Positions 28,083-64,000 of a stretch of 64,000 nt of DNA are shown piece after piece. The DNA is from Paramoeba atlantica (lineage: Eukaryota > Protista > Discosea), in NCBI GenBank assembly GCA_977017575.1, contig CDRNVI010000151.1, positions 62,001 to 126,000 on the forward strand. Reading direction: 5' to 3'. Within the stretch, counting starts at the first letter, position 1. Each line of letters begins with the position of its first letter. The notes beneath the pieces are model-generated. The model was given only the letters and a program-made list of their open reading frames with translations, was not told the DNA's origin and did not search any database. Both the position numbers and the translations under genes were made by a program.

Positions 28083-33365
<5,283 letters not shown>

Positions 33366-47763: not shown

Positions 47764-47883
47764 TATTTTTTTTCATTTTTTCATTTTTTCTTTTTTCGTT
47801 TTCGTTTTTTTGCAACAATCTCTTTTTTCAAGTTTTCTTTTTCTAAATTGTGAATTGTTCAAAGCAAAATTTTGAGGGGAAAG

Positions 47884-48583: not shown

Positions 48584-48910
48584 TCTCACACTCCAACAAC
48601 AACAAAAAAAAAAGAAAAAAGAAATGGTGTCTTTCGAGAAAAGCTCGAAAATGGACACCATTTTTTTCGAAACGAAAAACTAACTTTTCAACATAGCCTT
48701 TTTTGAAAAGTAGTAAAGTACTTTTTATTATGTAGGTCATTTTAAAAAGTAAAAGTAAAATAAAGGATTATTTGATCAAGAAAATCAAGCATAAAATGCT
48801 TATGAAAAAGACAACCCTTAAAAGTAACTGTAGTACGAACGACTTTTTCGTTTCTTTTCTTTTCTGTTCTCTTGTGTTTGGACCGTGTTTGGTTTTTCTG
48901 GTGTGAAACC

Positions 48911-51900
48911 ATGAGTTTTCCTCCACCGGGTATCTTCCCCCAACCTGGTCAACAACAACAACAACAACAACCCCCACCTCCTCACCTTCAACAACAACAA
49001 CAACAACCCCCACCACCCTCTCATCAACCACCACCGCCAAAACAAGAACCCCCCCCTCACTTTACGAAAGATTTGTTAGAAGAAAAGAAAAAGAAATGGG
49101 CGCAACTCAACGCAAAACGTTATTGTGACAAAAGAAAGTTTGGATACGTTGAACCACAGAAGGAAGACATGCCCCCTCAACATCTTCGAAAGATCATTAA
49201 AGATCATGGGGATATGTCAGCAAAGAAATTTCGCCACGACAAACGAGTTTACCTGGGTGCTTTAAAGTATGTTCCTCATGCCATTTTTAAATTGTTGGAG
49301 AATATGCCTATGCCTTGGGAAGAAGTTCGAGATGTAAACGTTTTGTATCACATGACTGGTGCGATCACATTTGTCAATGAGATTCCTTGGGTTGTCGAGC
49401 CGATTTATATCGCCCAATGGGGAACAATGTGGATGATGATGCGAAAAGAAAAGCGAGATCGTCGCCACTTTAAGAGAATGCGGTTCCCCCCTTTTGATGA
49501 TGAAGAACCTCCCCTTGACTATGGTGAAAACATTTTAGATATTGAACCTGTTGAGGGAATACAAATGGAGTTGGACCCTGATGAAGATGAGCCTGTTTAT
49601 GAATGGTTTTATGATCACCAACCTCTCAAGCGCTCAAAATTAGTCAATGGCCCAAGCTACAAGCGATGGAAATTGACTGTTCCCATCATGTCCACTTTAT
49701 ATCGATTGGCTGGGCAACTTTTGAGTGATCTGACGGACCCAAATTACTTTTATTTATTCGATTTGAAATCTTTCTTCACTGCAAAAGCGTTGAATATGGC
49801 GATCCCTGGAGGTCCCAAGTTCGAGCCACTTTTTCGCGATATTGAAGCTCAAGATGAAGATTGGAATGAGTTCAACGATATTCACAAAATTATTATTCGA
49901 CACCCAATCCGGACTGAATCTCGTATTGCGTTTCCCTTCCTTTACAATGATCGACCTCGCAAAGTATTCGTGACCCCTTATCATCATCCATTGGTCTGTT
50001 ACATGAAGACTGAGGATCCAAACCTTCCTGCCTTCTTCTGGGACCCTTTAATTAACCCAATCCCTGGTATGAAGTCATCACGGGCACTTACAGAATTTGA
50101 GGAAGAACTTCTTGAGGGTGAAGAAGATGATTTCAGCCTTCCAGAGGACGTCGAACCTTTCTTAATTGATACACCTTTGTTTTCTGGCAACACAGCGGCT
50201 GGGATTGCTCTCTACTGGGCTCCTCATCCTTTTAATGAGCGTACAGGCCATATGCGACGAGCGTTGGATATTCCTTTGGTGAAACCGTGGTTCCTTGAAA
50301 GGTGTCCTCCAAACCAACCTGTTAAAGTCCGAGTGAGTTATCAAAAACTTCTCAAGTGTTATGTCCACAATTGCTTAAAGAAGAGACCTCCGAAGTCTTT
50401 GAAGAGAAGAGCTTTGTTCAAATCACTCAAAGTAACAAAGTTCTTCCAGACAACTGAAATTGATTGGGTGGAGGCTGGACTTCAAGTTTGTCGACAAGGG
50501 TATAACATGTTGAATCTTTTGATCCACCGAAAGAATTTGAACTATCTTCACTTGGATTATAACTTTATGTTGAAACCCATCAAGACACTGACTACGAAAG
50601 AAAGAAAGAAGTCTCGATTTGGGAATGCGTTCCATCTCTGCAGAGAGATCCTTCGTTTGACCAAATTTGTTGTTGATTCGTATGTCCAATATCGTCTTGG
50701 GAATCTCGATGCTTACCAATTAGCTGATGGTCTCCAATATATCTTTGCTCATGTTGGACATTTAACGGGAATGTATAGGTATAAATATCGATTGATGAGA
50801 CAAATTCGAATGTGTTTCGACCCGGAGACGCCCGTTATGATGGCGAACGGTACAACCAAAGCAATCAAGGATGTCGAGGTTGGCGAGGAGGTGATGGGCG
50901 ACACGTTAACGTCACGAAAGGTTGTTGCCAAGGCAGATGGTCTTGCGCAAATGTACCGTGTTACTTACGATAACAAAGGGGACAAATCTGCGTGGGATGA
51001 CGAGGGTTCGAGCTCATCGTTTGTCTGCAACGGGCCGCATCAGCTCGTTGTTATTGTCAAGTCCGACTTGCACATCGATACCACCACAGATATCCTACGC
51101 GTCACGTACTGCAAGATGGTCCAGGATGATAATCTTGGTTTTGAGGTGCCACTTCTTACTGCCCTGCAGTTCGCCGTCAACCCACATGCATATGACATGG
51201 AGCCCAACGCAAAAGCCAAGGCCAAGGTTGCCGCTGAAACCAAGGCTCATGAGCTTCAGGTCCTGGGTTACAAAACCGCCCTGACCCACCTGGCCAAACA
51301 AGGGCAATTTCGTGTGCTCGTGCCCAAGGCAAACCGACCGGAGGGTGCGGATGCCAAGGACTTCGCCTTCACCTACTCGTACAATCGCACTGGGGGCCAG
51401 TACTATTTGACCAGAGAGAAGGCTGTTGCTGCGAGCGAGAAGTTTTTTGCCTCATGCAAGGCGGAATTGGTGTGGGAACCCACAGTCGAGCAGTGGTTGC
51501 GTTTCGAGGAACAGTATCCGAGGCGTGCTAAAAAGTGCAAGATGGTTCGTGTTGGCCGTCCATCCGCAATCACGAATCCACCTGTGAAACTCTTGTCAGA
51601 TCTCGTGCGCGAGTCGATCAAGCAGGTTGCGGACAATCACGGACCACAGCCAAAAGTGAGTTTGGAGAACGCCATTCCCAAGCTGGCTTTCCTCGTTGGC
51701 GTGTGGCTTGGTGCTGGTCACAACAAGTCACCGTCAATCTACATGGTCTTAAATGAGGAGACCAGGTCCTTCTACAATGGATTGCAGCAAATTACCGACG
51801 ACCTTGGTCTCACTATTGGAAAGCGCACCATGAGCAACGATCCAAAGCATGCCCACCTCTGCCACGAGTGGTATGTGACATTCTCCTCTGCGAGTAAATC

Positions 51901-54900
51901 GAGGAAGCGTAAAGGAATGAGCGAAAATAATCTTGGAAATTGCACCCAACAGAACGTCTTATGTGTCCTACTCAAGCGCCTCGGGTTCTACGAGGTTTCT
52001 AACAAACACCTCTCAGAGGAGGTCATCCTCTCCGTGGTCTGTGACAGCCAAGAGGTGCGAGGTGCGCTTTTAGCGGGCCTGATTGATACTGACGGCCATC
52101 TTGAAATGAACAGAATGTGGCGCATCACGCAGAAAGACCATGATGCAAACGGAATGCATCACAAATCCATTCTTGACCTCGCTCATCGAACTGCACTCTC
52201 ATTGGGCCTTCACTCTTCACGTTGTAGGGCAAAGAAGGTGTATAAGTCGACACTGAGGGGCAAACCTCTCGCATCAGGCATTATGGGAGGAACGTGCATC
52301 ACAACCCCACCAGTGAATGACCCTATCTCCAAATTCATCCTTACTGACTACAAGCGCATCACGGAGAGCAGCCACAATATGTTGCGATCGGATCGTAACC
52401 GCCAGCTGTACAGGTTCAAGGTGTCCAAGATGGACACACCAGAAGGTCCATATGTTGGTATCCAAGTCGAAGGTGAGAACGAGCGATTCCTCCTTGGGGA
52501 CCATGTGAGCGTGCACAACTGTAAAGATCTTAAGCATTTGATCTACTATCGCTTCAACACCGGTCCAGTTGGAAAGGGTCCTGGTTGTGGATTTTGGGCT
52601 CCAGGTTGGCGTGTATGGCTCTTCTTCCTTCGTGGTATTGTACCTTTATTAGAAAGATGGTTGGGTAATTTGCTTGCTCGACAATTTGAAGGTCGTCACT
52701 CCAAAGGAATTGCGAAGACTGTTACGAAACAACGTGTAGAAAGTCATTTTGATTTAGAGTTGCGAGCTGCTGTGATGCATGACATTCTTGATATGATGCC
52801 TGAGGGTCTCAAACAAAACAAGTCTCGAACGATCTTACAGCATTTGAGTGAGGCATGGCGATGTTTTAGTCCTTCTACGCCCGTACGAATGGCTGATGGG
52901 ATGACCAAGAAAGCTGGTGATATTGTGAAAGGTGATCTCGTCCTTGGGAGTAAGGGTCAAGGGCTTCCAGTTCTCCATACAATGAATGGTCGTGATCGAA
53001 TGTATCGTGTGGATCTCCTTCCTGATGGTGTTAATGAAGGAAATGATCCCAATTGGAACTTTGAGGAAGATGGATTTGTGTGCAATAGCAGACACGAACT
53101 AGTCCTTGTCAATCCGCAGCTTGGTGGAGTTTCCATCAACCACAATGCGACCCGTCGTGTGTTTGAGGTGCATTCTGCTGGTCTTGTTCCGTACAAAGGT
53201 CCTGTTCCAATTGAAAAACACCTTGGTCATATTTGCAGAACGTTTTCCTATTCAGAAAATATGTACAGATCCTTGAAGGCGAGCAAGGATGCTGCTGAAG
53301 CTGAGGCCAAATACTTGAAAGAATCTGGGGCATCCAATGTACGTGTGCAGGTGAACTATAAGCGCGGTTGTGTAAGTGTGTCTGTTGCTTCCCTCAATGG
53401 TGCAGTCAGGAAGCACTCTGGAACCTTTCGTTTTGGAGTCTCTAAACTAAATGGGACGACAGACACCGATCGAATCTTTGCAGGAGAAGCAGCTGCGAAG
53501 GCTGCTGCTGAGAGTTATGTGGTTGATTGTGCCAAAATACCAGCGATGTGGAGTGTTAGTGTGGAAGACTATCTTGCCTACTGCAAGGCCCATCCCCAAC
53601 ATGCTGATCGCTTGCGCATGGTGTTCTGTGATCAAATTGAGTTTCCACGTGTCATCCACCTGCAGAAACAATTTTATAATGTTGATGACCTCCTCAATGA
53701 TATGTATGCTTCCAACTTGCTTCCTCATGCAACTGCTGCTGATGTGGCCTATTTACTTGGGCTGCACTTGGCTGATGGTAAGAAAGGACATGCAAAGTTC
53801 TTCTTGGGTCTTCATGAGAAGAAGATCATCGATTACCTTGTGGCCATTGCTCCTACATTTGGCATGGTGGCAACATTGGAGAAGCCAGTGACCAACTGTC
53901 AGCCTGTCTATCTTTCTGGGTGTGATTTCCGTGTTCCTAACTCACGTAAACGTAACACACTACTCTCCCTATTCTGTCATCTGGGGTATGGCATTGATGA
54001 TACTAAAAAAGTGAGTGGAAAACTGTGGAAAAATATCGTCTTGCAGGACTCTACCTTCCGCCGTGCTGTGCTTGCTGGTCTCATTGATGGTGACGGAACC
54101 TACCAGATTGCGCATCGCAACTGTGACAAACCTCATGGATATGGATTTGTTCAAGGGGTTGATAGTGAGTATTCAAAACATCATGAAGATATTATGTTCC
54201 TTGTGAGGGATATTTCCAGAAGCCTTGGTCTCAATTGCTTTATTTTCCGCCGTTCAAACGGATATCCTGCTGACCGAGTACGTCTGACATGCAACATCAC
54301 TGGTGATGGTGTCCACCTGATTCCGTGCAAAGAGAAACCTTTAATGAAGCATGAGTGCAGTGAGAACCCGTCTCGTTTCCGTGGTTATGTTCAATTTAAA
54401 GTCACAAAGGCCAGTGAGAATGGGCCCTACTGTGGATTTCAGCTGGAAGGCTCACCACTTTTCCTCTTGAAGAACTGGTTGATTGCCCATAATTGTTTTA
54501 AAGCTAACATCCCTTGGAAGGTTCCAGGATTGCCCATTGCCATTGAAAATATGATTCTTCGATATGTGAAGAGTAAGGCAGATTGGTGGACCAATGTTGC
54601 GCATTATAATCGTGAGCGAATTAGGCGAGGTGCCACTGTCGATAAAACTGTTTGCCTCAGCCCAGACACCGAGGTGCGTATGTGGGACGGTTCAGTGCGT
54701 ACCATGACTGAAGTAAATGTTGGTGATCTCCTCGTTGGTGATGACAGTACACCCCGCACTGTAATTGAGCGGTGGACTGGCATGACGGATGTCATGTACG
54801 AGATCAATCAGCACAATGGCATGACATATCGTTGCACAGGGAAGCACCAGCTCGTGGCGAGATTGTCGGGCTGCAAGCAGCAGTGTTATGTGGACAAGCG

Positions 54901-57900
54901 TTCGGGCAAATGGTGTGTTGAGTGGTGGACTGTCGAGAACAAATGCCTGATGCGGAACTATGGTCCCAAAGCATTCAACACTGAGGAAGAGGCGCGCAAC
55001 TTCCTGGTGACCAAGCCAACAATTACTACAGGTGAGTTGGCTGAACTGTGTGTCGAGGATGTGCACAACCAATTCAAGTCAATTCGTTCGCATGTCTTTG
55101 GTGTGCGTGTTGGTGTTCACACAGACAGAGCTAGCCACAACCACCCACTACTCCTCGAGCCATACATGCTGGGCCTGTGGCTGGGTGATGGCACGACGTC
55201 TGGGCGCCCAATGGTGACAACAAACGATGAGGAGATTGTGATGTACCTCAAGGGCTTTGCGAAACGACTCAACCTCTCAGTCAAGGCTCAGGAGAGTGGA
55301 CGAATCGGTGAGACAGATAACAAGTTCTTCTCCTACTACCTTGCCTCCCCACATGGGCAGCCCAACCAATTTCTGGAAGCGCTCAGGCACTACGGTGTTC
55401 TGCACAGCAAGTGCATCCCAAATGACTACATGGGTGCATCACGTGCCGACCGCCTCTCACTGCTCGCTGGTTTCCTGGATTCCAACGGGTGGGTGCACAA
55501 GGACAAGTTCCCAAGAGAGGAATACATTACCTATGGACTCTCCTTCTCGCAGGGTACCAATCACAAAGACCTTCTGTATGACTTCTCTGACCTGTGCCGC
55601 TCACTCGGTTTTGCCGGCTGTGAGGTCCGCCAGTACACCGCAGGTGTGCGAAAATTGAGGAAGCGCAAGAAAGATAATGTGGAGATGATGCGATGGCAAT
55701 TCGTAGCCTCAGGCCCCACATGTCACGATGTGCCAACACTGTTGGAGCGCAAACGCGTGCCCACTGATGCGTGTTGGCGCGACACAACATCAGGCATCCC
55801 CAGCAAGTTGGAGTTGTCGAAGATAGAGGCACTGGAACAACCATATGTGGGTGTCACAGTGAGCGGTGCGAATCATCGATTTCTCCTGCGGGACTACACT
55901 GTAACCCACAACTGCAAGAAGAATCTTGGACGTTTAACACGATTGTGGCTCAAAGCTGAGCAAGAACGCCAACATAATTATTTGAAAGATGGGCCATATA
56001 TTAGCGCTGAGGAAGCCGTGGCTATCTATACAACTACTGTTCATTGGCTTGAGAGCCGAAAGTTTTCTCCAATCCCTTTCCCTCCTTTGAATTACAAACA
56101 TGATACAAAGTTATTGATTTTAGCGTTGGAGAGGCTGAAGGAAGCTTATTCTGTGATGGCTCGATTAAATCAGTCCCAAAGAGAAGAACTTGGTTTGATT
56201 GAACAGGCTTATGATAACCCACACGAAGCTCTTAGTCGGATTAAACGTCATTTACTAACACAACGTGCCTTTAAAGAAGTTGGAATTGAATTTATGGACT
56301 TGTATAGTCACTTGGTGCCTGTTTATGATGTCGAACCTTTAGAAAAGATTACTGACGCGTATTTAGACCAGTATCTATGGTACGAGGCTGATAAGAGGCA
56401 CCTCTTCCCTGGTTGGATCAAACCTGGAGATTCTGAACCACCTCCTTTGTTGGTCTACAAATGGTGCCAGGGGATTAATAACTTACACAATGTGTGGGAT
56501 ACATCCAATGGTGAGTGTGTTGTGATGCTTGAGACGAAGTTAGAAAAGATTTATGAAAAGGTTGATTTGACACTGTTGAATCGTTTATTACGTTTGATTC
56601 TCGATCACAATATCGCCGATTACATTACAGCGAAGAATAATATTGTGATGAATTACAAAGATATGAATCATACGAATTCATATGGGTTGATTCGTGGTCT
56701 GCAGTTTGCTTCTTTTATCGTTCAATTCTATGGTTTAGTTTTGGATCTTCTTCTTTTGGGTTTGACTCGTGCTTCTGAAATTGCTGGTCCTCCTGAAATG
56801 CCCAATGATTTCCTCACGTTTCACAGCTTGGTCATGGAAACCAAACACCCCATTCGACTCTATTCTCGTTATATTGATCGCATCCACATTTGTTATCGTG
56901 TGACACATGACGAAGCTAAAGAGTTGATTCAACGATATCTGACAGAGCACCCTGATCCGAATAACGAAAATATTGTTGGGTATCCAAACCGAAAATGTTG
57001 GCCGCGTGATTGTCGGATGAGGTTGATGAAACATGATGTGAATTTAGGAAGAGCTTTGTTCTGGGATCTGAAGAATCGGTTACCCCGTTCTGTGTCGACT
57101 ATTGAGTGGGAGAACTCTTTCGTGTCGGTATACAGCAAAGATAACCCTAACTTATTATTTAATATGTGTGGGTTTGAGGTTCGGGTCTTACCAAAGATGA
57201 GAGCTATTAATGAATCGTTTACAAACAAAGATGGAGTCTGGAATCTTCAAAACGAGAGTACAAAAGAACGGACTGCTCAAGCATTTTTGCGAGTTGATGA
57301 AGAGAGTCTGAAAAGGTATGAGAACAGAGTTCGAATGATTTTGATGGCTTCTGGTTCCACTACCTTTACTAAGATTGTTAACAAGTGGAACACATCTTTG
57401 ATTGGTCTGATGACCTATTTCCGTGAAGCTGTCGTTCACACACAAGAATTGTTGGATCTATTGGTCAAGTGTGAAAACAAAATTCAGACTCGTATTAAAA
57501 TTGGGTTGAACTCAAAGATGCCTTCTCGTTTCCCTCCTGTTGTCTTCTATTGCGTCGCGCCAAACACACCGGTGAGGATGGCTGATGGCTCAGAGAAGGC
57601 AATGGGCAACATCGAGCTTGGTGAGTTGGTCCTTGGTGACGATGGTGGCATCCGGACTGTTGCACACATCCATTCTGGAAAGGCACCACTCTACCGTGTT
57701 GCACTTGCGCACAATAAGATGGACAACTTCCTCTTCAATGACTCAGCATTCGTCTGCAATGGCAATCACAAGCTGGTCATCTCGCTCATCAAGGACGAGG
57801 CATCAAATGGTCTCCGGATCGACACAACAGGTGACATGAACTCAGTGAGGGGTTCCATTGGCTGCCGCTTCCTCACACTCAAGTTCGACCCTCACCTTGG

Positions 57901-60900
57901 CGCTGAGCGGCCATATGAGGTTGAATGCTGTATCAAGTGGAATGTCAACAACTTCGCGCGCCTGATCAAGGAGAAAGGGTATGATGTCTACAACACTCGT
58001 GCTGAGGCAATTGCTGCTGCGGAGGAGATGCAGAAGACGATGTCAGTGACTGAGTGGCACGTCTCAACAAGTGTCTATCTTGAATATGAGCGTGGTGTGA
58101 GGGAGGGCCGGGGCTTGCACATCCCACTCAAGATGCGGTATGGTGCCTCCATTGAAGAATGGCCTGTCCGGAGCTTGTGGAGACCGTCACTCACCGACAT
58201 CATCAATGAGGGCATTGCGATAGTGGGGCTTGTGGGTGTGACTGTGACAGCGGAGCAGATGGCTTGGATGATTGGCCTGTGGCTTGGTGGTGGCACTGCC
58301 AAGGAGACAAGGATCTCTGTGGGTGATGACGACTGGCCTGAGCTGAAACCAAAGTTTGAGGAGTTTGGTGCTGCGTGTGGGCTAAAGATCAACCACACAT
58401 CAGATCCACAAGAGAGGTGCGGGCGGGTGACGCTTGAGCCAATCGAGAAGAGGACAAACTACAAGCTCAACCTCTTGAACATTGTGTTGTCAAATCTGGG
58501 ACTCTTGGAGGAGAAGCAGGTGAGCACCAGGACAGAGGAGATTCTGATCACAGAGAGTGGCAACGTGCGGCGCTCCCTCATTGCCGGCCTCATCGACTCA
58601 GACGGTTTCGTCCGCCATGACGTCAACACTGACAGGCCCAAGGGCTACACATTCACACAGTCAATCCGTGCGAACCACGAGTCAATCCTACACCTCTTCT
58701 ACATCATCTCACGCTCACTTGGGTTGATGACGTTCACGCGTAAATATGTTGTCAAGGATACAACACAAGAGTTGAATGGCAGAGCAGAGACAGGTGCCAA
58801 GTGCTGGATGCGTGGAGATATCCACATTGCGGGTGATGTACACATGTTGCCAGTGGCGCTCTCGAAGAAGAAGATCGACCAACCAACATTCCAGCATAAT
58901 CGCCAGGTGCGCACGTTCGAGATCACCAAGGAGACTGAGGACGGTGACTATGTCGGCTTCGCAGTGGGCGAGGGTGAGTCGCCTCTCTTCTGTCTCGGTG
59001 ACTTCCTCGTGACGCACAATACTCCAAAGGAGTTGGGAGGTCTTGGGATGTTGTCGATGGGTCATGTGTTGATTCCTCAGTCCGATCTTCGGTATGCCAA
59101 ACAAACTGATATTGGGATCACCCACTTCCGATCTGGTCTTAGCCACGAAGAAGGACAATTAATCCCTAACTTGTATCGTTATATCCAACCTTGGGAGATG
59201 GAGTTTATTGATTCCCAAAGAGTCTGGGCGGAATATGCCTTGAAGAGACAAGAGGCAAATGCGCAAAATCGGCGATTGACTTTAGAGGATTTGGAAGACA
59301 GTTGGGATAAGGGAATTCCTCGAATCAACACTCTCTTCCAAAAGGATCGACATACTCTTGCCTATGACAAGGGTTGGCGAGTCAGAACAGACTTCAAGCA
59401 GTACCAATTGTTGAAAAATAACCCTTTCTGGTGGACTCATCAACGTCACGATGGAAAACTTTGGAATTTGAATAATTATCGAACTGATATGATCCAAGCG
59501 TTGGGAGGTGTCGAAGGTATTTTGGAACATACTTTGTTTAAGGGAACCTACTTTCCGACATGGGAAGGTCTCTTTTGGGAGAAGGCGTGCTTCCGCATCG
59601 ATACTGAGTTGATGCTCGCCACTGGGGAGACTATTTTGGCAAAAGATGTCAAAGTAGCTACTCTTCTCATGGGGGATGATGGAACACCGAGGAAAGTTGC
59701 AAAGGTTGTGAATGGAATCGACAGATTGTATGAAATTTCTTTCACTGGTCACGAAAGCGAGCCATTGGTTGTCACTGGAAACCACATCTTATGTCTTAAA
59801 GCAAGTTCGAGTTTGGATGATGATGATTCGATAAATATTAAAAAAGGAGAGATAATCGAAATGACTGTTGAAGAATATCTTGCATTGCAACCAATTGTTC
59901 AAAGGCTTTTACGACTTTACCGGGCATCTTCTATTCCATTCAATACTGAATGCACGCCGGATAAGATGCTTGTTGATCCATACTTTTTGGGACTATGGTT
60001 AGGTGATGGCATGCATCTCAGTGAAGACAAAGAGAACATTCGGACTGATCATGGTAAGAAAAATCCATTACTCGACGATCTGCGTTCGTTACAATTGATT
60101 CCACCTGCGGGAGAGAGGTTAAAAGGACCGGAAGTTGGTATGAAACATATCCCAGATATTTACAAGTTTGCAAGCGAAGAAACTCGCCTGCAGGTACTGG
60201 CTGGCTTACTCGACAGCGACGGATGCCACAATGATGATCGCAGAATTGTTTATGTATTCACACAATCTGATCGTTTGTGGCACAAACGGCTCTTTGAAGA
60301 TACTGTTTTTCTGGCTCGAAGTCTCGGTTTCAGCTGCTGCCCTATTAATCTCGAAGATGTGGGTGAAAAAGAGATTTTAGGAGGACGAATGTGTGAAACT
60401 GGAAACACTTTAAGACTGCAGATATTCGGTGATATCAATAAAATTCCGGTGAAACTCAACCGAAAAATGGCGCGCGAGAGAATAACGACTGCTGCAGATT
60501 GGCGCACACATAGCATTGGATCGATTCGTCAACTCGAGAAACCTGAACCTTTTGTTGGTTTCTTGGTTGATGGCAACAAGCGTTTCTTGCGCGCAGACTT
60601 CTTGGTCACACACAACTCTGGTTTTGAAGAATCCATGAAGTACAAGAAATTGACAAATGCACAGCGCTCTGGTTTGAATCAGATCCCTAATCGACGATTC
60701 ACATTATGGTGGTCTCCAACTATTAACAGAGCGAATGTGTATGTTGGATTTCAAGTCCAGCTTGATTTAACTGGTATTTTCATGCACGGAAAAATTCCTA
60801 CTTTGAAGATTTCTCTCATTCAAATTTTCCGTGCCCATTTGTGGCAGAAGATACATGAGAGTATCGTTATGGATCTTTGTCTCCGAGATGACCAAATGAT

Positions 60901-63900
60901 TTTGGCCGCTGATGGGAGCCACATCACTGCAGGAAACGTTACAGAGGGAACCATGTTGGTTGGCGAAGATGGTGCTCCTCGTAGAGTAGTTGCTATTCAT
61001 AAAGGAGAAAGTCCAGTGATGTATCATTTCCATCCTCGGAAGCTTCGAAAGGGTGACACTGCACAGCAAGGATTCGTCTGCACCCCAAATCATATTGTTT
61101 GTTTGAGGTTACCAAAACCTGTTATCCAAAGGAGATCAAACCCAACATCTGTAATTGTGCGGTATCCAGAAATATTGATGAAAGTTGAATTTGACTTTCC
61201 GACTTTCCAAATGAAAGAGAAGAGGTTCTCAGTGGATCCCACTCAGTTTGGTGCGCTCTCTCACAATCCCCAGGAACGTTGTAAAGACTCAGCCGACAAA
61301 TTCATGGACGAAGCGAGGAAGAAGGGTTGTAAAGTTCAGTTGGTTCACTTAAAGTCACAGGAAAAGTATGTTGTAAAAATTTCTGATGCACCTGCTGAGA
61401 GTGACTTGAATGTTGGTTCGATTGGATTTTCTTACAGAAACCATTATCGCTCAGGTGTCCCTTCGATTGATGATGCTGAAAGGGAGGCTGTGTTATTTTT
61501 GGATTCGCTCGAGAAGGATGTTGTATGGGAGGTGACTGCCAAAAATTACTTTGATTGGGCTCAATCTTCCTCCTTGCACAAGGAATGCCGATTATATCTG
61601 AAACCGACAGTATGTACCACATGGGAAGATGATGTGACTCTAGCTAGAGAGTGGTCTCAACGATCTGGGCTCTCTTTGCACGAACTTGGCTGGCTCTTAG
61701 GATTGTGGCTTGGTGATGGGAAAGCTGATGACACCCGAATTACCCTCGACATGAGCAAAGATCTGGCTTCATTTGAGCGTCTGAAATCTCTTGCTGAGAA
61801 AATGAAGCTCTATGTAGTTATCCCGCCTCAGTTTGACAGCCAAATGGCTATTGAAGATCGATCTCAACTTGTTCTTTTGAGTACAAGCCCTTCTTCACGA
61901 AATGTAAAAACAGCAAACATCTTCTGGAACATTCTCAGTGCGTTTGGGGCAAATACTCCTGGAAAACGTTTGACTCAGGGATCTATTCAAAAATTTGTCC
62001 AATCGCCAGAGCAGTTCCGTCTTGGTCTCCTTGCTGGTCTTATTGACTCAGATGGTACTCTCTCTACGAGTGAAGAACGACATCGACACTATGTATTCAG
62101 CCAGTATCTTGGTCATGTAGAGATCGTAGAGCTTGCCCAGCGCGTTGCTTCGAGTATTGGAGCTCGTGCCAATGTTACTCAAGTAGATTATGTTGATCGG
62201 CGCACAAAGAAGAACCATTCCCGTAAAGACCTTATCATTGGGGGAACAGCGAAGCTATTGGAGTTGGACTGTGCGATTCTTTCAAAGAGACTTCCTCGTG
62301 ATAGTTTTGATCGTCCATTTGTTCAAGATCCTTCAGTCAGGTGCTTTGACGTTAACCAAATCAGAGGTGGTTCATTTACTGGATTCCAATTGGATGACAA
62401 TGGCCCTAATGCACGATTTCTTCTTGCAAATGGAATTTCTACACACAATTGTCAAGTGTTTGACCAAGAACTTGATGCATTGGAGATTGAGACTGTGCAA
62501 AAGGAGACCATCCATCCCCGAAAGAGCTACAAGATGAATAGCTCTTGTGCTGATATCTTGTTATTTGCTTCGTACAAGTGGCAAGTCTCTAAACCTTCCT
62601 TATTGATGGATGGAGGGGATACATTTGAAGGAACAACGACGAAATATTGGTTGGATGTGCAACTTCGTTGGGGAGATTATGATTCGCATGATATTGAGAG
62701 GTATTCTCGTGCTAAGTTTTTGGATTATACGACTGATAATCTCTCTCTCTATCCTTCTCCAACTGGGTGTCTTGTTGGAGTTGATTTGGCGTATAACTTG
62801 TACGCTTCCTACGGAAATTGGTTCCCTGGATGTAAACCACTGATCCAACAAGCTTTGGCCAAAATTATCAAAGCAAACCCAGCTTTGTATGTCCTTCGTG
62901 AGCGTATTCGAAAAGGTCTTCAACTGTATTCTTCTGAGCCAACTGAACCATACCTGACTCCTCAGAATTATGGAGAGCTGTTCAGCAAGCAGATTATTTG
63001 GTTTGTGGACGACACAAATGTCTATCGGGTCACAATTCATAAGACTTTTGAGGGTAACTTAACCTGCTTCCCAGCGGATGATCATCAGATCTTGACTGAG
63101 CATGGCTTCTGGTTCTTGTCACAAGTGCTGGAGCATTTTGAAACACACGAGACACTCAGTGTTGGCTGCTATGTGGAAGGTGTGCTTGAGTACCATGACA
63201 TCACCCGCGCGGATGTCACAATTCAGGAAGGCTCACATGATTTGGTCAGCATGGTCTCAGAGAAGACTAAGCGCAATGGTAGAGGTGGATCAACTCGTGT
63301 TATGTCTGCCGATAATGTGGACATTGCACCCACTTCGAACCATCGCATGCTGCTTCGTGTGGGCCGAACAGTGGGCCACCGAGAGTGGCCAGGTAGCAAG
63401 AAAACTCCCCCGCCACTTGAGGTCCATCTTGCTGGTTCTGTACTTGAGAAGGGCCAAGCAGACGATACTGTTGTCGCTCAGTTTTTGGCACACTTCAGTG
63501 AAGGAGAGAAGGTGACTTGTGCTGACCTTCCATTTGCTCAGGCTCTGGATCTGAGAACTGGTGATGAGGTGGATGCATTCTTGGAGCTCTATGGCTATTG
63601 GGTGGGTGATGGATATCTCAACATTAACGCCAAAGCCATTGCATTTGCGCCCAAGAAGGTCAATGATTGGGATTATCTGGATGCCCTCTTTGAGCGCCTG
63701 GAGCGTGTTCTGCCAGAAATCACGCATGAAACTCACCGTGGTGGAGTCCAGATTGCTGCCCGCCCACCAATCCTGGAGTGCAACAAGCCTGCTGGACGTG
63801 CTGCAGCGCCTCGTGTTGGAGAACGCCAGCGTTTGTACCACATTTCCAAATCTGAATGGTTTGACTATTTTTACCATGAGTATGGGCACAAATATGTTGG

Positions 63901-64000
63901 TGGTCCCAATGAGGCCCAGAAACGTCTTGATGGTACTTATCCACCAGACGCTGAGAACACAAACTCAACCAAGTTGTTCTGGTACTGGGTTTGGAAGCGG
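48911..64000 (+). CDS. PRP8: Pre-mRNA splicing factor PRP8 precursor with at least 7 inteins; 3'-partial
   Basis: KRVYLGALKYVPHA, RFGNAFHLCRE, YRFNTGPVGKGPGCGFW, SRFPPVVFY|TPKELGG, EGLFWEKA|SGFEES, FEGNLT. All 13 junction codons checked share the ATG frame, and the ORF track lists no other ORF in that frame, consistent with one ORF open past 64000. Confidence 0.99.
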   Translation, partial: MSFPPPGIFPQPGQQQQQQQPPPPHLQQQQQQPPPPSHQPPPPKQEPPPHFTKDLLEEKKKKWAQLNAKRYCDKRKFGYVEPQKEDMPPQHLRKIIKDHGDMSAKKFRHDKRVYLGALKYVPHAIFKLLENMPMPWEEVRDVNVLYHMTGAITFVNEIPWVVEPIYIAQWGTMWMMMRKEKRDRRHFKRMRFPPFDDEEPPLDYGENILDIEPVEGIQMELDPDEDEPVYEWFYDHQPLKRSKLVNGPSYKRWKLTVPIMSTLYRLAGQLLSDLTDPNYFYLFDLKSFFTAKALNMAIPGGPKFEPLFRDIEAQDEDWNEFNDIHKIIIRHPIRTESRIAFPFLYNDRPRKVFVTPYHHPLVCYMKTEDPNLPAFFWDPLINPIPGMKSSRALTEFEEELLEGEEDDFSLPEDVEPFLIDTPLFSGNTAAGIALYWAPHPFNERTGHMRRALDIPLVKPWFLERCPPNQPVKVRVSYQKLLKCYVHNCLKKRPPKSLKRRALFKSLKVTKFFQTTEIDWVEAGLQVCRQGYNMLNLLIHRKNLNYLHLDYNFMLKPIKTLTTKERKKSRFGNAFHLCREILRLTKFVVDSYVQYRLGNLDAYQLADGLQYIFAHVGHLTGMYRYKYRLMRQIRMCFDPETPVMMANGTTKAIKDVEVGEEVMGDTLTSRKVVAKADGLAQMYRVTYDNKGDKSAWDDEGSSSSFVCNGPHQLVVIVKSDLHIDTTTDILRVTYCKMVQDDNLGFEVPLLTALQFAVNPHAYDMEPNAKAKAKVAAETKAHELQVLGYKTALTHLAKQGQFRVLVPKANRPEGADAKDFAFTYSYNRTGGQYYLTREKAVAASEKFFASCKAELVWEPTVEQWLRFEEQYPRRAKKCKMVRVGRPSAITNPPVKLLSDLVRESIKQVADNHGPQPKVSLENAIPKLAFLVGVWLGAGHNKSPSIYMVLNEETRSFYNGLQQITDDLGLTIGKRTMSNDPKHAHLCHEWYVTFSSASKSRKRKGMSENNLGNCTQQNVLCVLLKRLGFYEVSNKHLSEEVILSVVCDSQEVRGALLAGLIDTDGHLEMNRMWRITQKDHDANGMHHKSILDLAHRTALSLGLHSSRCRAKKVYKSTLRGKPLASGIMGGTCITTPPVNDPISKFILTDYKRITESSHNMLRSDRNRQLYRFKVSKMDTPEGPYVGIQVEGENERFLLGDHVSVHNCKDLKHLIYYRFNTGPVGKGPGCGFWAPGWRVWLFFLRGIVPLLERWLGNLLARQFEGRHSKGIAKTVTKQRVESHFDLELRAAVMHDILDMMPEGLKQNKSRTILQHLSEAWRCFSPSTPVRMADGMTKKAGDIVKGDLVLGSKGQGLPVLHTMNGRDRMYRVDLLPDGVNEGNDPNWNFEEDGFVCNSRHELVLVNPQLGGVSINHNATRRVFEVHSAGLVPYKGPVPIEKHLGHICRTFSYSENMYRSLKASKDAAEAEAKYLKESGASNVRVQVNYKRGCVSVSVASLNGAVRKHSGTFRFGVSKLNGTTDTDRIFAGEAAAKAAAESYVVDCAKIPAMWSVSVEDYLAYCKAHPQHADRLRMVFCDQIEFPRVIHLQKQFYNVDDLLNDMYASNLLPHATAADVAYLLGLHLADGKKGHAKFFLGLHEKKIIDYLVAIAPTFGMVATLEKPVTNCQPVYLSGCDFRVPNSRKRNTLLSLFCHLGYGIDDTKKVSGKLWKNIVLQDSTFRRAVLAGLIDGDGTYQIAHRNCDKPHGYGFVQGVDSEYSKHHEDIMFLVRDISRSLGLNCFIFRRSNGYPADRVRLTCNITGDGVHLIPCKEKPLMKHECSENPSRFRGYVQFKVTKASENGPYCGFQLEGSPLFLLKNWLIAHNCFKANIPWKVPGLPIAIENMILRYVKSKADWWTNVAHYNRERIRRGATVDKTVCLSPDTEVRMWDGSVRTMTEVNVGDLLVGDDSTPRTVIERWTGMTDVMYEINQHNGMTYRCTGKHQLVARLSGCKQQCYVDKRSGKWCVEWWTVENKCLMRNYGPKAFNTEEEARNFLVTKPTITTGELAELCVEDVHNQFKSIRSHVFGVRVGVHTDRASHNHPLLLEPYMLGLWLGDGTTSGRPMVTTNDEEIVMYLKGFAKRLNLSVKAQESGRIGETDNKFFSYYLASPHGQPNQFLEALRHYGVLHSKCIPNDYMGASRADRLSLLAGFLDSNGWVHKDKFPREEYITYGLSFSQGTNHKDLLYDFSDLCRSLGFAGCEVRQYTAGVRKLRKRKKDNVEMMRWQFVASGPTCHDVPTLLERKRVPTDACWRDTTSGIPSKLELSKIEALEQPYVGVTVSGANHRFLLRDYTVTHNCKKNLGRLTRLWLKAEQERQHNYLKDGPYISAEEAVAIYTTTVHWLESRKFSPIPFPPLNYKHDTKLLILALERLKEAYSVMARLNQSQREELGLIEQAYDNPHEALSRIKRHLLTQRAFKEVGIEFMDLYSHLVPVYDVEPLEKITDAYLDQYLWYEADKRHLFPGWIKPGDSEPPPLLVYKWCQGINNLHNVWDTSNGECVVMLETKLEKIYEKVDLTLLNRLLRLILDHNIADYITAKNNIVMNYKDMNHTNSYGLIRGLQFASFIVQFYGLVLDLLLLGLTRASEIAGPPEMPNDFLTFHSLVMETKHPIRLYSRYIDRIHICYRVTHDEAKELIQRYLTEHPDPNNENIVGYPNRKCWPRDCRMRLMKHDVNLGRALFWDLKNRLPRSVSTIEWENSFVSVYSKDNPNLLFNMCGFEVRVLPKMRAINESFTNKDGVWNLQNESTKERTAQAFLRVDEESLKRYENRVRMILMASGSTTFTKIVNKWNTSLIGLMTYFREAVVHTQELLDLLVKCENKIQTRIKIGLNSKMPSRFPPVVFYCVAPNTPVRMADGSEKAMGNIELGELVLGDDGGIRTVAHIHSGKAPLYRVALAHNKMDNFLFNDSAFVCNGNHKLVISLIKDEASNGLRIDTTGDMNSVRGSIGCRFLTLKFDPHLGAERPYEVECCIKWNVNNFARLIKEKGYDVYNTRAEAIAAAEEMQKTMSVTEWHVSTSVYLEYERGVREGRGLHIPLKMRYGASIEEWPVRSLWRPSLTDIINEGIAIVGLVGVTVTAEQMAWMIGLWLGGGTAKETRISVGDDDWPELKPKFEEFGAACGLKINHTSDPQERCGRVTLEPIEKRTNYKLNLLNIVLSNLGLLEEKQVSTRTEEILITESGNVRRSLIAGLIDSDGFVRHDVNTDRPKGYTFTQSIRANHESILHLFYIISRSLGLMTFTRKYVVKDTTQELNGRAETGAKCWMRGDIHIAGDVHMLPVALSKKKIDQPTFQHNRQVRTFEITKETEDGDYVGFAVGEGESPLFCLGDFLVTHNTPKELGGLGMLSMGHVLIPQSDLRYAKQTDIGITHFRSGLSHEEGQLIPNLYRYIQPWEMEFIDSQRVWAEYALKRQEANAQNRRLTLEDLEDSWDKGIPRINTLFQKDRHTLAYDKGWRVRTDFKQYQLLKNNPFWWTHQRHDGKLWNLNNYRTDMIQALGGVEGILEHTLFKGTYFPTWEGLFWEKACFRIDTELMLATGETILAKDVKVATLLMGDDGTPRKVAKVVNGIDRLYEISFTGHESEPLVVTGNHILCLKASSSLDDDDSINIKKGEIIEMTVEEYLALQPIVQRLLRLYRASSIPFNTECTPDKMLVDPYFLGLWLGDGMHLSEDKENIRTDHGKKNPLLDDLRSLQLIPPAGERLKGPEVGMKHIPDIYKFASEETRLQVLAGLLDSDGCHNDDRRIVYVFTQSDRLWHKRLFEDTVFLARSLGFSCCPINLEDVGEKEILGGRMCETGNTLRLQIFGDINKIPVKLNRKMARERITTAADWRTHSIGSIRQLEKPEPFVGFLVDGNKRFLRADFLVTHNSGFEESMKYKKLTNAQRSGLNQIPNRRFTLWWSPTINRANVYVGFQVQLDLTGIFMHGKIPTLKISLIQIFRAHLWQKIHESIVMDLCLRDDQMILAADGSHITAGNVTEGTMLVGEDGAPRRVVAIHKGESPVMYHFHPRKLRKGDTAQQGFVCTPNHIVCLRLPKPVIQRRSNPTSVIVRYPEILMKVEFDFPTFQMKEKRFSVDPTQFGALSHNPQERCKDSADKFMDEARKKGCKVQLVHLKSQEKYVVKISDAPAESDLNVGSIGFSYRNHYRSGVPSIDDAEREAVLFLDSLEKDVVWEVTAKNYFDWAQSSSLHKECRLYLKPTVCTTWEDDVTLAREWSQRSGLSLHELGWLLGLWLGDGKADDTRITLDMSKDLASFERLKSLAEKMKLYVVIPPQFDSQMAIEDRSQLVLLSTSPSSRNVKTANIFWNILSAFGANTPGKRLTQGSIQKFVQSPEQFRLGLLAGLIDSDGTLSTSEERHRHYVFSQYLGHVEIVELAQRVASSIGARANVTQVDYVDRRTKKNHSRKDLIIGGTAKLLELDCAILSKRLPRDSFDRPFVQDPSVRCFDVNQIRGGSFTGFQLDDNGPNARFLLANGISTHNCQVFDQELDALEIETVQKETIHPRKSYKMNSSCADILLFASYKWQVSKPSLLMDGGDTFEGTTTKYWLDVQLRWGDYDSHDIERYSRAKFLDYTTDNLSLYPSPTGCLVGVDLAYNLYASYGNWFPGCKPLIQQALAKIIKANPALYVLRERIRKGLQLYSSEPTEPYLTPQNYGELFSKQIIWFVDDTNVYRVTIHKTFEGNLTCFPADDHQILTEHGFWFLSQVLEHFETHETLSVGCYVEGVLEYHDITRADVTIQEGSHDLVSMVSEKTKRNGRGGSTRVMSADNVDIAPTSNHRMLLRVGRTVGHREWPGSKKTPPPLEVHLAGSVLEKGQADDTVVAQFLAHFSEGEKVTCADLPFAQALDLRTGDEVDAFLELYGYWVGDGYLNINAKAIAFAPKKVNDWDYLDALFERLERVLPEITHETHRGGVQIAARPPILECNKPAGRAAAPRVGERQRLYHISKSEWFDYFYHEYGHKYVGGPNEAQKRLDGTYPPDAENTNSTKLFWYWVWKR
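50813..52519 (+). mobile_element. PRP8 intein 1 (569 aa), site RQIRM|CKDLKH, after extein residue 634
   Basis: Starts CFDPETPVMMANG; block B FVCNGPH; LAGLIDADG motifs GVWLGAG and LAGLIDTDG; ends VSVHN, +1 Cys. Confidence 0.97.
52862..54493 (+). mobile_element. PRP8 intein 2 (544 aa), site SEAWR|CFKANIP, after extein residue 748
   Basis: Starts CFSPSTPVRMADG; block B FVCNSRH; GLHLADG and LAGLIDGDG; ends LIAHN, +1 Cys. Confidence 0.97.
54653..55912 (+). mobile_element. PRP8 intein 3 (420 aa), site VDKTV|CKKNLG, after extein residue 801
   Basis: Starts CLSPDTEVRMWDG; block B YRCTGKH; GLWLGDG and LAGFLDSNG; ends TVTHN, +1 Cys. Confidence 0.97.
57551..59020 (+). mobile_element. PRP8 intein 4 (490 aa), site PVVFY|TPKELG, after extein residue 1347
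   Basis: Starts CVAPNTPVRMADG; block B FVCNGNH; GLWLGGG and IAGLIDSDG; ends LVTHN, +1 Thr. Confidence 0.97.
59588..60616 (+). mobile_element. PRP8 intein 5 (343 aa) at the classical fungal PRP8-a site FWEKA|SGFEES, after extein residue 1536
   Basis: Starts CFRIDTELMLATG; block B VVTGNH; GLWLGDG and LAGLLDSDG with shortened spacing; ends LVTHN, +1 Ser. Confidence 0.97.
60878..62449 (+). mobile_element. PRP8 intein 6 (524 aa), site IVMDL|CQVFDQ, after extein residue 1623
   Basis: Starts CLRDDQMILAADG; block B FVCTPNH; GLWLGDG and LAGLIDSDG; ends ISTHN, +1 Cys. Confidence 0.97.
63065..64000 (+). mobile_element. PRP8 intein 7 (at least 312 aa, cut by the window end), site FEGNLT|(predicted TKPING), after extein residue 1828
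   Basis: The conserved PRP8 sequence FEGNLT is followed by CFPADDHQILTEHG; block B PTSNHRM; first LAGLIDADG-like motif ELYGYWVGDG. C-terminus not visible. Confidence 0.9.

What the first reader, a model, noticed from the sequence alone, without database searches (positions are those of the whole stretch)
48911..64000. PRP8 precursor carrying at least seven inteins, hidden from the ORF track
Seen: one frame from 48911 past 64000 in which conserved PRP8 sequence is broken seven times by Cys...His-Asn insertions of 569, 544, 420, 490, 343, 524 and at least 312 aa, with +1 residues C, C, C, T, S, C (seventh predicted T). Inteins are 3202 of 5030 codons (~64%). Roughly 500 aa of PRP8 lie beyond the window, so there may be more. 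Established: PRP8 is an essential core spliceosome protein, and the FWEKA|SGFEES site is the known fungal intein site. As I recall, multi-intein PRP8 genes have been reported in a few protists (e.g. Anaeramoeba), so novelty must be judged site by site. Inference: all seven must splice before any spliceosome works, in a very intron-rich genome; sites 1-3 lie within 167 extein residues.
Basis: partly seen in the sequence, partly recalled or inferred. Interest (0 to 1): 0.93.

Follow-up and report, generated by a model that had tools for sequence, protein, structure and literature searches.

The report
Seven-intein PRP8 gene in an amoeba
An uncultured marine amoebozoan encodes its essential spliceosome protein PRP8 as a roughly 5,700-residue precursor interrupted by seven self-splicing inteins; this is real and exceeds the published record of five, but unreported fungal PRP8 genes already in GenBank carry eight to ten.

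Summary
From 48911 to 64000 there are 5,030 codons with no stop, against 134-368 stops in the other five frames. PRP8 sequence is interrupted at seven points by inserts of 569, 544, 420, 490, 343, 524 and at least 312 aa. A second, noisier public copy of the locus shows that intein 7 ends ...VVGN|T, that 538 aa of uninterrupted PRP8 follow, and that the total is exactly seven. I1-I6 are VDE/PI-SceI-like inteins. I7 belongs to a family that Pfam and PDB sequence searches miss; its nearest complete homologue models as a HINT plus LAGLIDADG fold, and relatives sit in DNA polymerase B of giant viruses with pandoravirus-sized genomes. The host is an amoebozoan. Its closest relatives (PRP8 90.5% and 86.9% identical) have no inteins, so the seven were probably gained in this lineage. 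All seven sites are occupied in other database PRP8s, so no site is unique, but three (S1, S3, S7) lie outside the published a-g scheme. Seven exceeds the literature record (five, Anaeramoeba) but not GenBank (Mycoemilia 10, Dimargaris 8-9). The 'very intron-rich genome' claim is not supported. Verdict: a new member of a known kind, of moderate interest.

The parts
48911..50812 (+). Extein 1 (aa 1-634): PRP8 N-terminus, PRO8NT domain and PROCN profile positions 3-210; ATG at 48911
50813..52519 (+). Intein I1, 569 aa, site S1 QIRM|CKDL (human M604|C605). Cys1, block B NGPH, ...VHN|C. Endonuclease motif 1 has Ala at the catalytic Asp position. GC3 0.61.
52520..52861 (+). Extein 2 (114 aa): PROCN 211-324
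52862..54493 (+). Intein I2, 544 aa, site S2 EAWR|CFKA (human R718|C719; literature site b). Block B NSRH, ...AHN|C. Both endonuclease Asp present. GC3 0.41.
54494..54652 (+). Extein 3 (53 aa): PROCN 325-377
54653..55912 (+). Intein I3, 420 aa, site S3 DKTV|CKKN (human V771|C772). Block B TGKH, ...THN|C. Endonuclease motif 2 reads DSNG (Asn at the catalytic Asp position). GC3 0.62. Only one other PRP8 with this site was found.
55913..57550 (+). Extein 4 (546 aa): end of PROCN, RRM_4, U5_2-snRNA_bdg 1-108 (human 772-1317)
57551..59020 (+). Intein I4, 490 aa, site S4 VVFY|TPKE (human Y1317|T1318; one of the two Capsaspora sites e/f). Block B NGNH, ...THN|T. Endonuclease motif 1 reads LGGG (Asp lost). 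GC3 0.65.
59021..59587 (+). Extein 5 (189 aa): U5_2-snRNA_bdg 109-133 and U6-snRNA_bdg 1-64
59588..60616 (+). Intein I5, 343 aa, site S5 WEKA|SGFE (human A1506|S1507; classical site a). Block B TGNH, ...THN|S. Both endonuclease Asp present. GC3 0.39.
60617..60877 (+). Extein 6 (87 aa): U6-snRNA_bdg 66-152
60878..62449 (+). Intein I6, 524 aa, site S6 VMDL|CQVF (human L1593|C1594; site d of Monier 2013, 87 aa after site a). Block B TPNH, ...THN|C. Aligns to PI-SceI with D218 and D326 equivalents present. GC3 0.37.
62450..63064 (+). Extein 7 (205 aa): endonuclease-like region and start of PRP8 domain IV (RNase H-like), profile positions 1-40
63065..64000 (+). Intein I7, first 312 of about 467 aa (cut by the window end), site S7 GNLT|TKPI (human T1799|T1800). 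Cys1 (CFPADDH), block B TSNH, LAGLIDADG-like LYGYWVGDG. In L001 it ends ...SRPVVVGN|T. No Pfam or PDB sequence hit. GC3 0.49.

Best explanation
This is the single-exon PRP8 gene of an uncultured marine amoebozoan. It is translated as one precursor of about 5,720 aa: 2,366 aa of extein plus about 3,357 aa of intein, so roughly 59% of the precursor is intein. Seven class-1 inteins, each starting with Cys and ending with Asn before a Cys, Ser or Thr, excise themselves by protein splicing and ligate the eight extein pieces into a normal PRP8. I1-I6 are VDE/PI-SceI-type inteins with a nested LAGLIDADG homing endonuclease. I7 belongs to a divergent intein family (CFPxxDH ... VVGN|T/S) that is shared with DNA polymerase B of pandoravirus-sized giant viruses and with other PRP8 sites. 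The seven are unrelated invaders, 22-38% identical to each other, and each is closest to inteins at the same site in other organisms. They were most likely acquired by homing or horizontal transfer after this lineage split from intein-free relatives. Shown here: the open frame, exact boundaries, catalytic residues, domain and fold identity, site sharing, intein-free relatives, and foreign composition of I1, I3 and I4. Inferred: that all seven splice, that I2, I5 and I6 still have active nucleases while I1, I3 and I4 are crippled, and that viruses were vectors.
For: The frame is open for 5,030 codons against 134-368 stops in the other frames. Exteins continue the PRP8 profiles and human PRP8 without loss at all junctions. 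I1-I6 hit Hom_end_hint at 1e-11 to 1e-25, plus Hom_end/LAGLIDADG. Cys1, the block-B His, terminal Asn and a C/T/S +1 residue are present in all seven, and I6 aligns to PI-SceI with H79, D218 and D326 equivalents. The I7 family conserves C1, T90 and H93; the AF2 model of the 54%-identical S7 intein of P0003 (pLDDT 81, pTM 0.83) matches TliVMA and PI-SceI inteins at E=7e-11 and 3e-10 and I-DmoI. A second independent assembly (L001, 99.8% identical) has the same architecture and supplies the end of the gene. No canonical splice-site pair could excise any insert exactly. The same seven sites are occupied by inteins in other PRP8s and the allelic rule holds. The closest PRP8s (90.5% and 86.9% identical) are intein-free.
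Against: There are no RNA or protein data, so splicing competence is inferred from residues only. The last ~155 aa of I7 are known only from a noisy copy with a frame break, and the fold test was done on a homologue, not on the window's I7. I7 has Gly rather than His before the terminal Asn; this is conserved in the family but is a departure from the canonical HN. Single-copy status of PRP8 is unproven. The three compositionally foreign inteins are the ones with damaged nuclease motifs, which does not fit a simple 'recent arrival = active nuclease' story.
Confidence: 0.92

Rival explanations
1. The inserts are removed from the RNA as unusual in-frame introns, not from the protein.
For: The genome does have at least one split gene, actin, with 3.9 kb between its two coding parts. 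No expression data exist.
Against: About 9.6 kb of insert sequence stays in frame without a stop (P about 1e-78). The inserts encode recognisable HINT and LAGLIDADG domains with conserved catalytic residues. No GT-AG, GC-AG or credible AT-AC pair can excise any insert exactly. Homologous inserts at the same sites are annotated within proteins of many unrelated organisms.
Confidence: 0.02
2. This is a dead or dispensable PRP8 copy, and the working spliceosome uses a separate intein-free paralogue.
For: Single-copy status was not tested against a whole genome, and intein-free PRP8s exist in close relatives.
Against: A decaying copy would not keep 5,030+ codons open, nor keep its exteins about 83% identical to animal and chytrid PRP8 and 90.5% to its nearest relative. 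The search scored on the N-terminal extein found no intein-free protein above 86% identity besides the window's own model. Extein codon usage matches the host genes.
Confidence: 0.04
3. The structure is an assembly chimera that stitched inteins from different organisms or viruses into one PRP8 contig.
For: Three inteins have clearly different base composition from the flanks. The source is metagenomic, and the ENA copy is error-rich.
Against: Two separately held assemblies share the identical order and junctions over 17.4 kb at 99.8% identity. Every junction is in frame and codon-exact at a known intein site. The compositional steps coincide exactly with intein boundaries, as expected for mobile elements rather than random mis-joins.
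Confidence: 0.01

Closest known systems
Anaeramoeba ignava BMAN Prp8, five inteins (Gallot-Lavallee et al. 2023, PMC10710043)
   Same: It is a multi-intein PRP8 in a free-living protist. It shares sites a, b, d and e with this gene. The inteins are of mixed origin, with links to Nucleocytoviricota inteins and non-allelic spread.
   Different: It has five inteins, not seven. The host is a metamonad, not an amoebozoan. Its fifth site (AKWK|TAEE) is empty here, while S1, S3 and S7 are not reported there. That paper states that four was the previous maximum per protein.
Kickxellomycotina PRP8 proteins in GenBank (Mycoemilia scoparia 6,458 aa; Dimargaris spp. 5,502-6,000 aa; Coemansia spp.)
   Same: They show the same phenomenon at higher dose: 10, 9, 9 and 8 inserts with C...HN|C/S/T boundaries. 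S1, S2, S4, S5, S6 and S7 are shared with this gene.
   Different: The hosts are fungi. Many of their sites are empty here (extein positions 576, 647, 906, 960, 1295, 1320, 1453, 1487, 1574, 1655, 1904). I found no paper describing them.
P0003, an unnamed 5,028-aa PRP8 from JGI metagenomes (seven inteins)
   Same: It shares six of the seven sites (S2-S7), including the only other S3 intein found. It also has the closest I7 relative, at 54-55% identity.
   Different: Its exteins are only about 73% identical and branch far from Amoebozoa. S1 is empty and site c is occupied. Its S3 and S5 inteins are mini-inteins of 173 and 143 aa.
PI-SceI (VMA1-derived endonuclease) and the fungal Prp8 site-a inteins (Cne Prp8 intein, 6MX6)
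   Same: I1-I6 share the Hom_end_hint and Hom_end architecture, the FxCNxxHxLV block B, the ...FLLxxxxVxHN C-terminus, and LAGLIDADG motifs aligned to D218 and D326.
   Different: Identity is only about 25-30%. The host sites differ, except for I5. I1, I3 and I4 each lack one catalytic Asp.
Inteins in DNA polymerase B of giant viruses with 1.84-2.47 Mb genomes (pandoravirus-sized; P. salinus polB is reported to carry two inteins, PMC6950457) and in Rpb2 of a giant-virus MAG
   Same: They are 42-43% identical to I7 over about 280 aa. They share the CFPxDDHE start, the TxNH block B, the LAGLIDADG motif and the ...VVGN end, with Ser instead of Thr at +1.
   Different: The host genes differ (polB, Rpb2). 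The viral copies are GC-rich (GC3 0.67-0.82, against 0.49 for I7) and about 50-100 aa longer.
Capsaspora owczarzaki PRP8 (three inteins, sites b, e, f; Monier et al. 2013, PMC3749507)
   Same: S2 and S4 are shared. Its third intein is of the I7 type (CFPAEDHE...).
   Different: That third intein sits at AKFLDY|T, 112 extein residues upstream of S7, and that site is empty here.

Membership tests
PRP8 (spliceosomal pre-mRNA processing factor 8) | Full domain set in order: PRO8NT, PROCN, RRM_4, U5- and U6-snRNA-binding regions, domain IV (RNase H-like), JAB/MPN, PROCT | tested here: met
   Domains through domain IV are in the window. JAB and PROCT are in the downstream part of L001. Colinear matches to human, yeast and other PRP8 cryo-EM chains have E=0.
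Intein (class 1, protein splicing) | In-frame insertion at a conserved point of a host protein, with host sequence continuous once the insert is removed | tested here: met
   All seven junctions are codon-exact, and the Pfam profile coordinates and human PRP8 numbering continue across them.
Intein (class 1, protein splicing) | N-terminal nucleophile (Cys or Ser at position 1) and block-B His (TxxH or NxxH) | tested here: met
   Cys1 is present in all seven. Block B reads NGPH, NSRH, TGKH, NGNH, TGNH, TPNH and TSNH. The His is an invariant column and aligns to PI-SceI H79.
Intein (class 1, protein splicing) | C-terminal His-Asn followed by Cys, Ser or Thr at +1 | tested here: met
   I1-I6 end in HN with +1 C, C, C, T, S, C. 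I7 ends Gly-Asn with +1 Thr. This is read from the noisy L001 copy but is identical in the five S7 homologues, the five site-647 relatives and five viral relatives. The penultimate His is therefore absent in I7. As I recall, some active inteins such as Ssp DnaE also lack it.
Intein (class 1, protein splicing) | HINT fold | tested here: met
   I1-I6 are above the Pfam Hom_end_hint gathering score. For the I7 family, sequence profiles find nothing, but the AF2 model of the 54%-identical homologue matches solved inteins at E 1e-10 to 1e-7. For the window's own I7 this is by homology.
Intein (class 1, protein splicing) | Actual excision and extein ligation | not testable with these tools
   This needs proteomics or a splicing reporter.
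LAGLIDADG homing endonuclease (PI-SceI type) | Two LAGLIDADG motifs, each with its catalytic acidic residue (PI-SceI D218 and D326; the catalytic role is recalled from the literature) | tested here: inconclusive
   Met in I2, I5 and I6. Not met in I1 (Ala) and I4 (Gly) at the D218 position, nor in I3 (Asn) at the D326 position. In I7, motif 1 is intact but motif 2 lies beyond the window in the noisy copy. Activity itself was not testable.
Published Prp8 intein sites a-g (Monier 2013; Green 2018, 2019) plus the Anaeramoeba site | Same insertion point as a named site | tested here: inconclusive
   By mapping the species named in the papers: S5 = a; S2 = b (Batrachochytrium, Capsaspora); S6 = d (87 aa after a); S4 = one of Capsaspora's e/f. 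S1, S3 and S7 match none of a-g. Site c (Spizellomyces) is at LEVH|, g (Acytostelium) is at AFHL|, the other Capsaspora site is at AKFLDY|, and the Anaeramoeba site is at AKWK|. The papers give the sites only in figures that I could not read, so the assignment is indirect.

The most novel reading that the evidence does not exclude
All seven inteins were stacked into PRP8 after this amoebozoan lineage split from relatives whose PRP8 is 90.5% identical and intein-free. At least one (I7) was exchanged with amoeba-infecting giant viruses, whose polB carries the same intein family, and the process is still running: three nucleases look intact and three inteins are compositionally un-ameliorated. 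If so, this lineage and its Tara Oceans relatives form a natural system in which the stepwise, virus-fed build-up of an intein stack in an essential gene could be ordered and followed as presence/absence polymorphism in wild populations.
Probability: 0.3. Interest if true: 0.7.

Novelty: new member of a known kind. Interest (0 to 1): 0.55.

Why it matters
PRP8 sits at the catalytic centre of the spliceosome. A precursor that must complete seven independent protein-splicing reactions is an extreme test of how much selfish-element load an essential gene tolerates: if each intein spliced at 90% efficiency, only about 48% of chains would mature (my arithmetic). This locus adds the first amoebozoan example I could find with more than two PRP8 inteins. 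It has intein-free close relatives for comparison, a mix of host-like and foreign-looking inteins, and a direct sequence link between a PRP8 intein and giant-virus polB inteins. The wider by-product may matter more to specialists: public databases already hold PRP8s with 7-10 inteins and about 20 distinct insertion sites, well beyond the 7-8 sites and five-intein maximum in the literature I could search.

Tried and rejected
- **Viral scans for I1, I3 and I4** found nothing. The method needs near-exact peptide words, so this says only that IMG/VR holds no close viral copy.
- **Pfam and PDB searches on the I7 family**, by sequence and by profile, were blank. Only the fold comparison worked.
- **First extein tree** left the window in an unresolved Amorphea polytomy and could have been read as 'not Amoebozoa'. 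Adding intein-free PRP8s resolved it.
- **'Chloroparvula japonica' label** on the nearest transcript was considered as evidence for a green-algal host and rejected. That sequence groups inside Amoebozoa with 95-100% support, is only 74.8% identical to Chloropicon, and the window carries RasGEF genes. It is probably a culture contaminant.
- **RasGEF homologue search for host identity** gave no named relative above 28% identity.
A 101-aa cluster member gave only a partial locus.
- **Recent intragenic duplication of inteins** was rejected: they are only 22-38% identical pairwise.
- **Exhaustive I3 search** found 8,625 relatives but none above about 42% identity, so no donor was identified.
Full report
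**Observation**

Translating the window from 48911 in its own frame gives 5,030 codons without a stop. The other five frames of the same 15 kb contain 134-368 stops each, and their longest open run is 224 codons. From base composition, the chance of 5,030 open codons is about 1e-123. The ORF lister reports nothing of 200 aa or more here, because the frame runs off the window.

I set boundaries by the conserved PRP8 flanks.
- Exteins: 634, 114, 53, 546, 189, 87 and 205 aa.
- Inserts: 569, 544, 420, 490, 343, 524 and at least 312 aa.
- +1 residues: C, C, C, T, S, C.

Every number in the finding is exact. With the inserts removed, the PRP8 Pfam profiles continue without loss across each junction. 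The pieces align colinearly to human PRP8 chains. In human numbering the sites are S1 M604|C605, S2 R718|C719, S3 V771|C772, S4 Y1317|T1318, S5 A1506|S1507, S6 L1593|C1594 and S7 T1799|T1800.

**The rest of the gene**

The window's own gene model is in the protein collection as a 3,495-aa fragment on a 75.6-kb ENA metagenome contig. That contig (L001) is not the same sequence as the window.
- Over 17.4 kb it is 99.8% identical, with 28 gap openings and 5 mismatches, mostly single-base insertions.
- These break its PRP8 into many called fragments.
- The window's frame stays open across every difference, so the window is the cleaner copy, and L001 is an independent witness of the same architecture.

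Beyond the window, L001 shows intein 7 continuing through one frame break and ending ...SRPVVVGN|TKPINGAIF. This is followed by 538 aa of uninterrupted PRP8 (domain IV, JAB, PROCT) and a stop. The total is therefore seven inteins. Extein length is 2,366 aa, I7 is about 467 aa, and the precursor is about 5,720 aa, of which about 59% is intein.

**What the inserts are**

I1-I6 each exceed the gathering score of Pfam Hom_end_hint and carry Hom_end/LAGLIDADG matches.

All seven begin with Cys and have a block-B His, reading NGPH, NSRH, TGKH, NGNH, TGNH, TPNH and TSNH. I1-I6 end His-Asn. I6 aligns directly to PI-SceI, which lets the key residues be transferred:
- The block-B His corresponds to H79.
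- The motif-1 GDG Asp corresponds to D218.
- The second Asp of DSDG corresponds to D326.

On that basis I2, I5 and I6 keep both nuclease Asp residues. I1 (Ala) and I4 (Gly) lack the first, and I3 (Asn) lacks the second. That D218 and D326 are the catalytic pair is recalled from the PI-SceI literature. The conclusion that three nucleases are crippled is an inference.

I7 is different. Neither it nor five homologues at the same site hit any Pfam intein family or any PDB sequence, even as a profile. The family nevertheless conserves Cys1, the TxNH block, a LAGLIDADG-like LYGYWxGxG motif and the ...VVGN end. An AlphaFold2 model of the closest complete member (P0003 S7 intein, 54% identical) has pLDDT 81 and pTM 0.83. 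It matches the TliVMA intein (E=7e-11), PI-SceI (E=3e-10), PI-PfuI and, for its middle domain, I-DmoI, at about 10% sequence identity. The family is thus a divergent HINT plus LAGLIDADG intein with Gly instead of His before the terminal Asn.

**Rivals**
- RNA-level removal has no sequence support. No canonical splice-site pair can excise any insert exactly, and 3,202 insert codons staying open by chance has P about 1e-78.
- A dead copy is contradicted by the open frame, the high extein conservation and host-like extein codon usage.
- A chimera is contradicted by the second assembly.
- A second, intein-free paralogue cannot be excluded. A search scored on the N-terminal extein, which admits normal-length PRP8s, found nothing above 86% identity other than the window's own model.

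**Host**

An extein-only tree that includes intein-free PRP8s places the window in a 100%-supported clade with two unnamed or mislabelled sequences. That clade is sister to Clydonella (97%) within Amoebozoa, together with Acanthamoeba and Acytostelium (95%).

One clade member is labelled Chloroparvula japonica (MMETSP1310). It does not group with green algae and is only 74.8% identical to Chloropicon, so I read it as an amoeba contaminant of that culture.

The other two sequences in the clade bear on how the inteins arose.
- The closer one is a Tara Oceans metagenome scaffold (L010). Its PRP8 is 2,344 aa, 90.5% identical, intronless and intein-free. Its protein sequence is identical around six of the seven sites.
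- The transcript relative is 86.9% identical and is also intein-free.

With Clydonella and Acanthamoeba intein-free too, seven gains in the window's lineage is the most parsimonious history. This is an inference.

The window's two RasGEF genes have no named relative above 28% identity, consistent with an unsequenced lineage.

The 'very intron-rich' claim is not borne out. PRP8 is intronless over about 17 kb, and neighbours include uninterrupted ORFs of 562-992 aa. Only actin is visibly split.

**Origins of the inteins**

The seven are 22-38% identical to each other, so they are not recent intragenic copies. Where allelic homologues were found, each intein's best match lies at the same site in another organism:
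- I2: 41% to Coemansia, 36% to Capsaspora.
- I4: 43% to unnamed protists and to Capsaspora.
- I5: 44% to the Chloropicon cluster.
- I6: 46-48% to the Chloropicon cluster and an oomycete-like cluster.
- I7: 55% to P0003.

I1 matches allelic Glomeromycotina inteins only weakly (28%).

I3 has one allelic partner, a mini-intein in P0003. It has no relative above about 42% among 1.84 billion representatives. Its nearest relatives lie in Rpb1, topoisomerase IIA, SNF2 and DEAD/ResIII helicases.

The I7 family has 42-43% identical members in DNA polymerase B of five giant-virus genomes of 1.84-2.47 Mb, and a 30% identical one in Rpb2 of a giant-virus MAG. As I recall, those genome sizes are those of pandoraviruses, which infect amoebae, and P. 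salinus polB is reported to carry two inteins.

Composition separates the inteins into groups. Host genes have GC3 of 0.28-0.40 (actin 0.52) and the exteins 0.40.
- I1, I3 and I4 have GC3 of 0.61-0.65 (z = 9-11) and clearly worse codon fit.
- I2, I5 and I6 are host-like.
- I7 is intermediate.

The viral I7-type copies are GC-rich. The foreign-looking inteins are also the ones with damaged nuclease motifs, which a simple homing-cycle model does not predict. I leave this unexplained.

**Comparison with what is known**

The literature I could search recognises seven Prp8 sites, a-g, plus one more in Anaeramoeba. It states that A. ignava Prp8, with five inteins, exceeds the previous maximum of four per protein. 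No paper combines inteins with Kickxellomycotina, Dimargaris, Coemansia, Mycoemilia or Zoopagomycota, or reports six or more inteins in one protein.

The databases say otherwise. Aligning long PRP8s to my extein gives the following counts of inserts with intein boundaries:
- Mycoemilia scoparia: 10
- Two Dimargaris species: 9 each
- D. cristalligena: 8
- An unnamed JGI metagenome PRP8: 7
- Coemansia species: 4-6

Across this set there are about 20 distinct sites.

All seven of my sites are occupied elsewhere at the same residue. The numbers of other occupied proteins are S1 10, S2 15, S3 1, S4 21, S5 86, S6 9 and S7 5. Mapping the species named in the papers gives S5 = a, S2 = b, S6 = d and S4 = one of Capsaspora's e/f. 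S1, S3 and S7 fall outside a-g. The two papers disagree on which motif is b and which is d. Batrachochytrium and the '87 residues downstream of a' statement support b = EAWR|C and d = VMDL|C.

**Verdict**

This is a real, well-formed seven-intein PRP8. It is a new member of a known kind rather than a new kind. It is above the published record but below what already sits unreported in GenBank.

Its particular value lies in four things: the amoebozoan host, the intein-free near relatives, the compositional layering of the inteins, and the giant-virus link of I7.

As I recall, S7 falls in the beta-hairpin of the RNase H-like domain, a known hotspot of prp8 alleles. I did not test this.

Noticed in passing
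Proteins P0010, P0011, P0012, P0031 (NCBI: Mycoemilia scoparia, Dimargaris xerosporica, D. verticillata, D. cristalligena): PRP8 proteins of 5,502-6,458 aa carry 8-10 inserts with intein boundary signatures. This is more than any intein count per protein in the literature I could search, and apparently undescribed.
   Followed up: partly
Extein coordinates of this gene: 199, 576, 634, 647, 748, 801, 906, 960, 1295, 1320, 1347, 1453, 1487, 1536, 1574, 1623, 1655, 1716, 1828, 1904: About 20 distinct PRP8 intein insertion points are visible in the retrieved database proteins, against 7-8 published.
   Followed up: partly
P0209 / P0321 (EukProt EP00211 'Chloroparvula japonica', MMETSP1310); locus L002: This PRP8 transcript groups inside Amoebozoa as sister to the window, not with green algae. 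It is probably an amoeba contaminant of that culture transcriptome.
   Followed up: partly
window 28313-28567 and about 32496-33365 (+): The actin gene is split. The first 85 codons and the remainder lie 3.9 kb apart. I could not place a canonical GT..AG junction that restores the conserved Trp, and a TGGCATCAC (W-H-H) copy lies 22 nt upstream of the CATCAC that is in frame.
   Followed up: no
window 47690-47764 (+): A tRNA-Met (CAT) gene lies 1.1 kb upstream of the PRP8 start codon.
   Followed up: no
window 4837-7815 (-) and 15821-17842 (-): Two RasGEF genes occur as long single ORFs. The best named homologues are only 25-28% identical (Anaeramoeba, Physarum, Arcella), while an unnamed ENA protein is 71% identical.
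   Followed up: partly
L001 (ENA ERZ24900291 ctg3911l) versus window 46556-64000: The public copy differs from the window by 28 gap openings and 5 mismatches in 17.4 kb. Gene callers therefore split its PRP8 into many fragments, which shows how such giant precursors get lost in noisy long-read metagenome assemblies.
   Followed up: yes
window 50813-52519, 54653-55912, 57551-59020 versus 52862-54493, 59588-60616, 60878-62449: The three GC3-rich, foreign-looking inteins (I1, I3, I4) are the ones that each lack a LAGLIDADG catalytic Asp. The three host-like ones (I2, I5, I6) keep both. This is the opposite of the simple homing-cycle expectation.
   Followed up: partly
L008 1253-8449 and L009 617-9049: Giant-virus polB (two inteins) and Rpb2 (at least two inteins of different types) carry members of the same Pfam-invisible CFPxxDH...VVGN intein family as I7. 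The same family also occupies PRP8 site YYRFN|TGP in Coemansia, Mycoemilia and Auxenochlorella, and AKFLDY|T in Capsaspora.
   Followed up: partly
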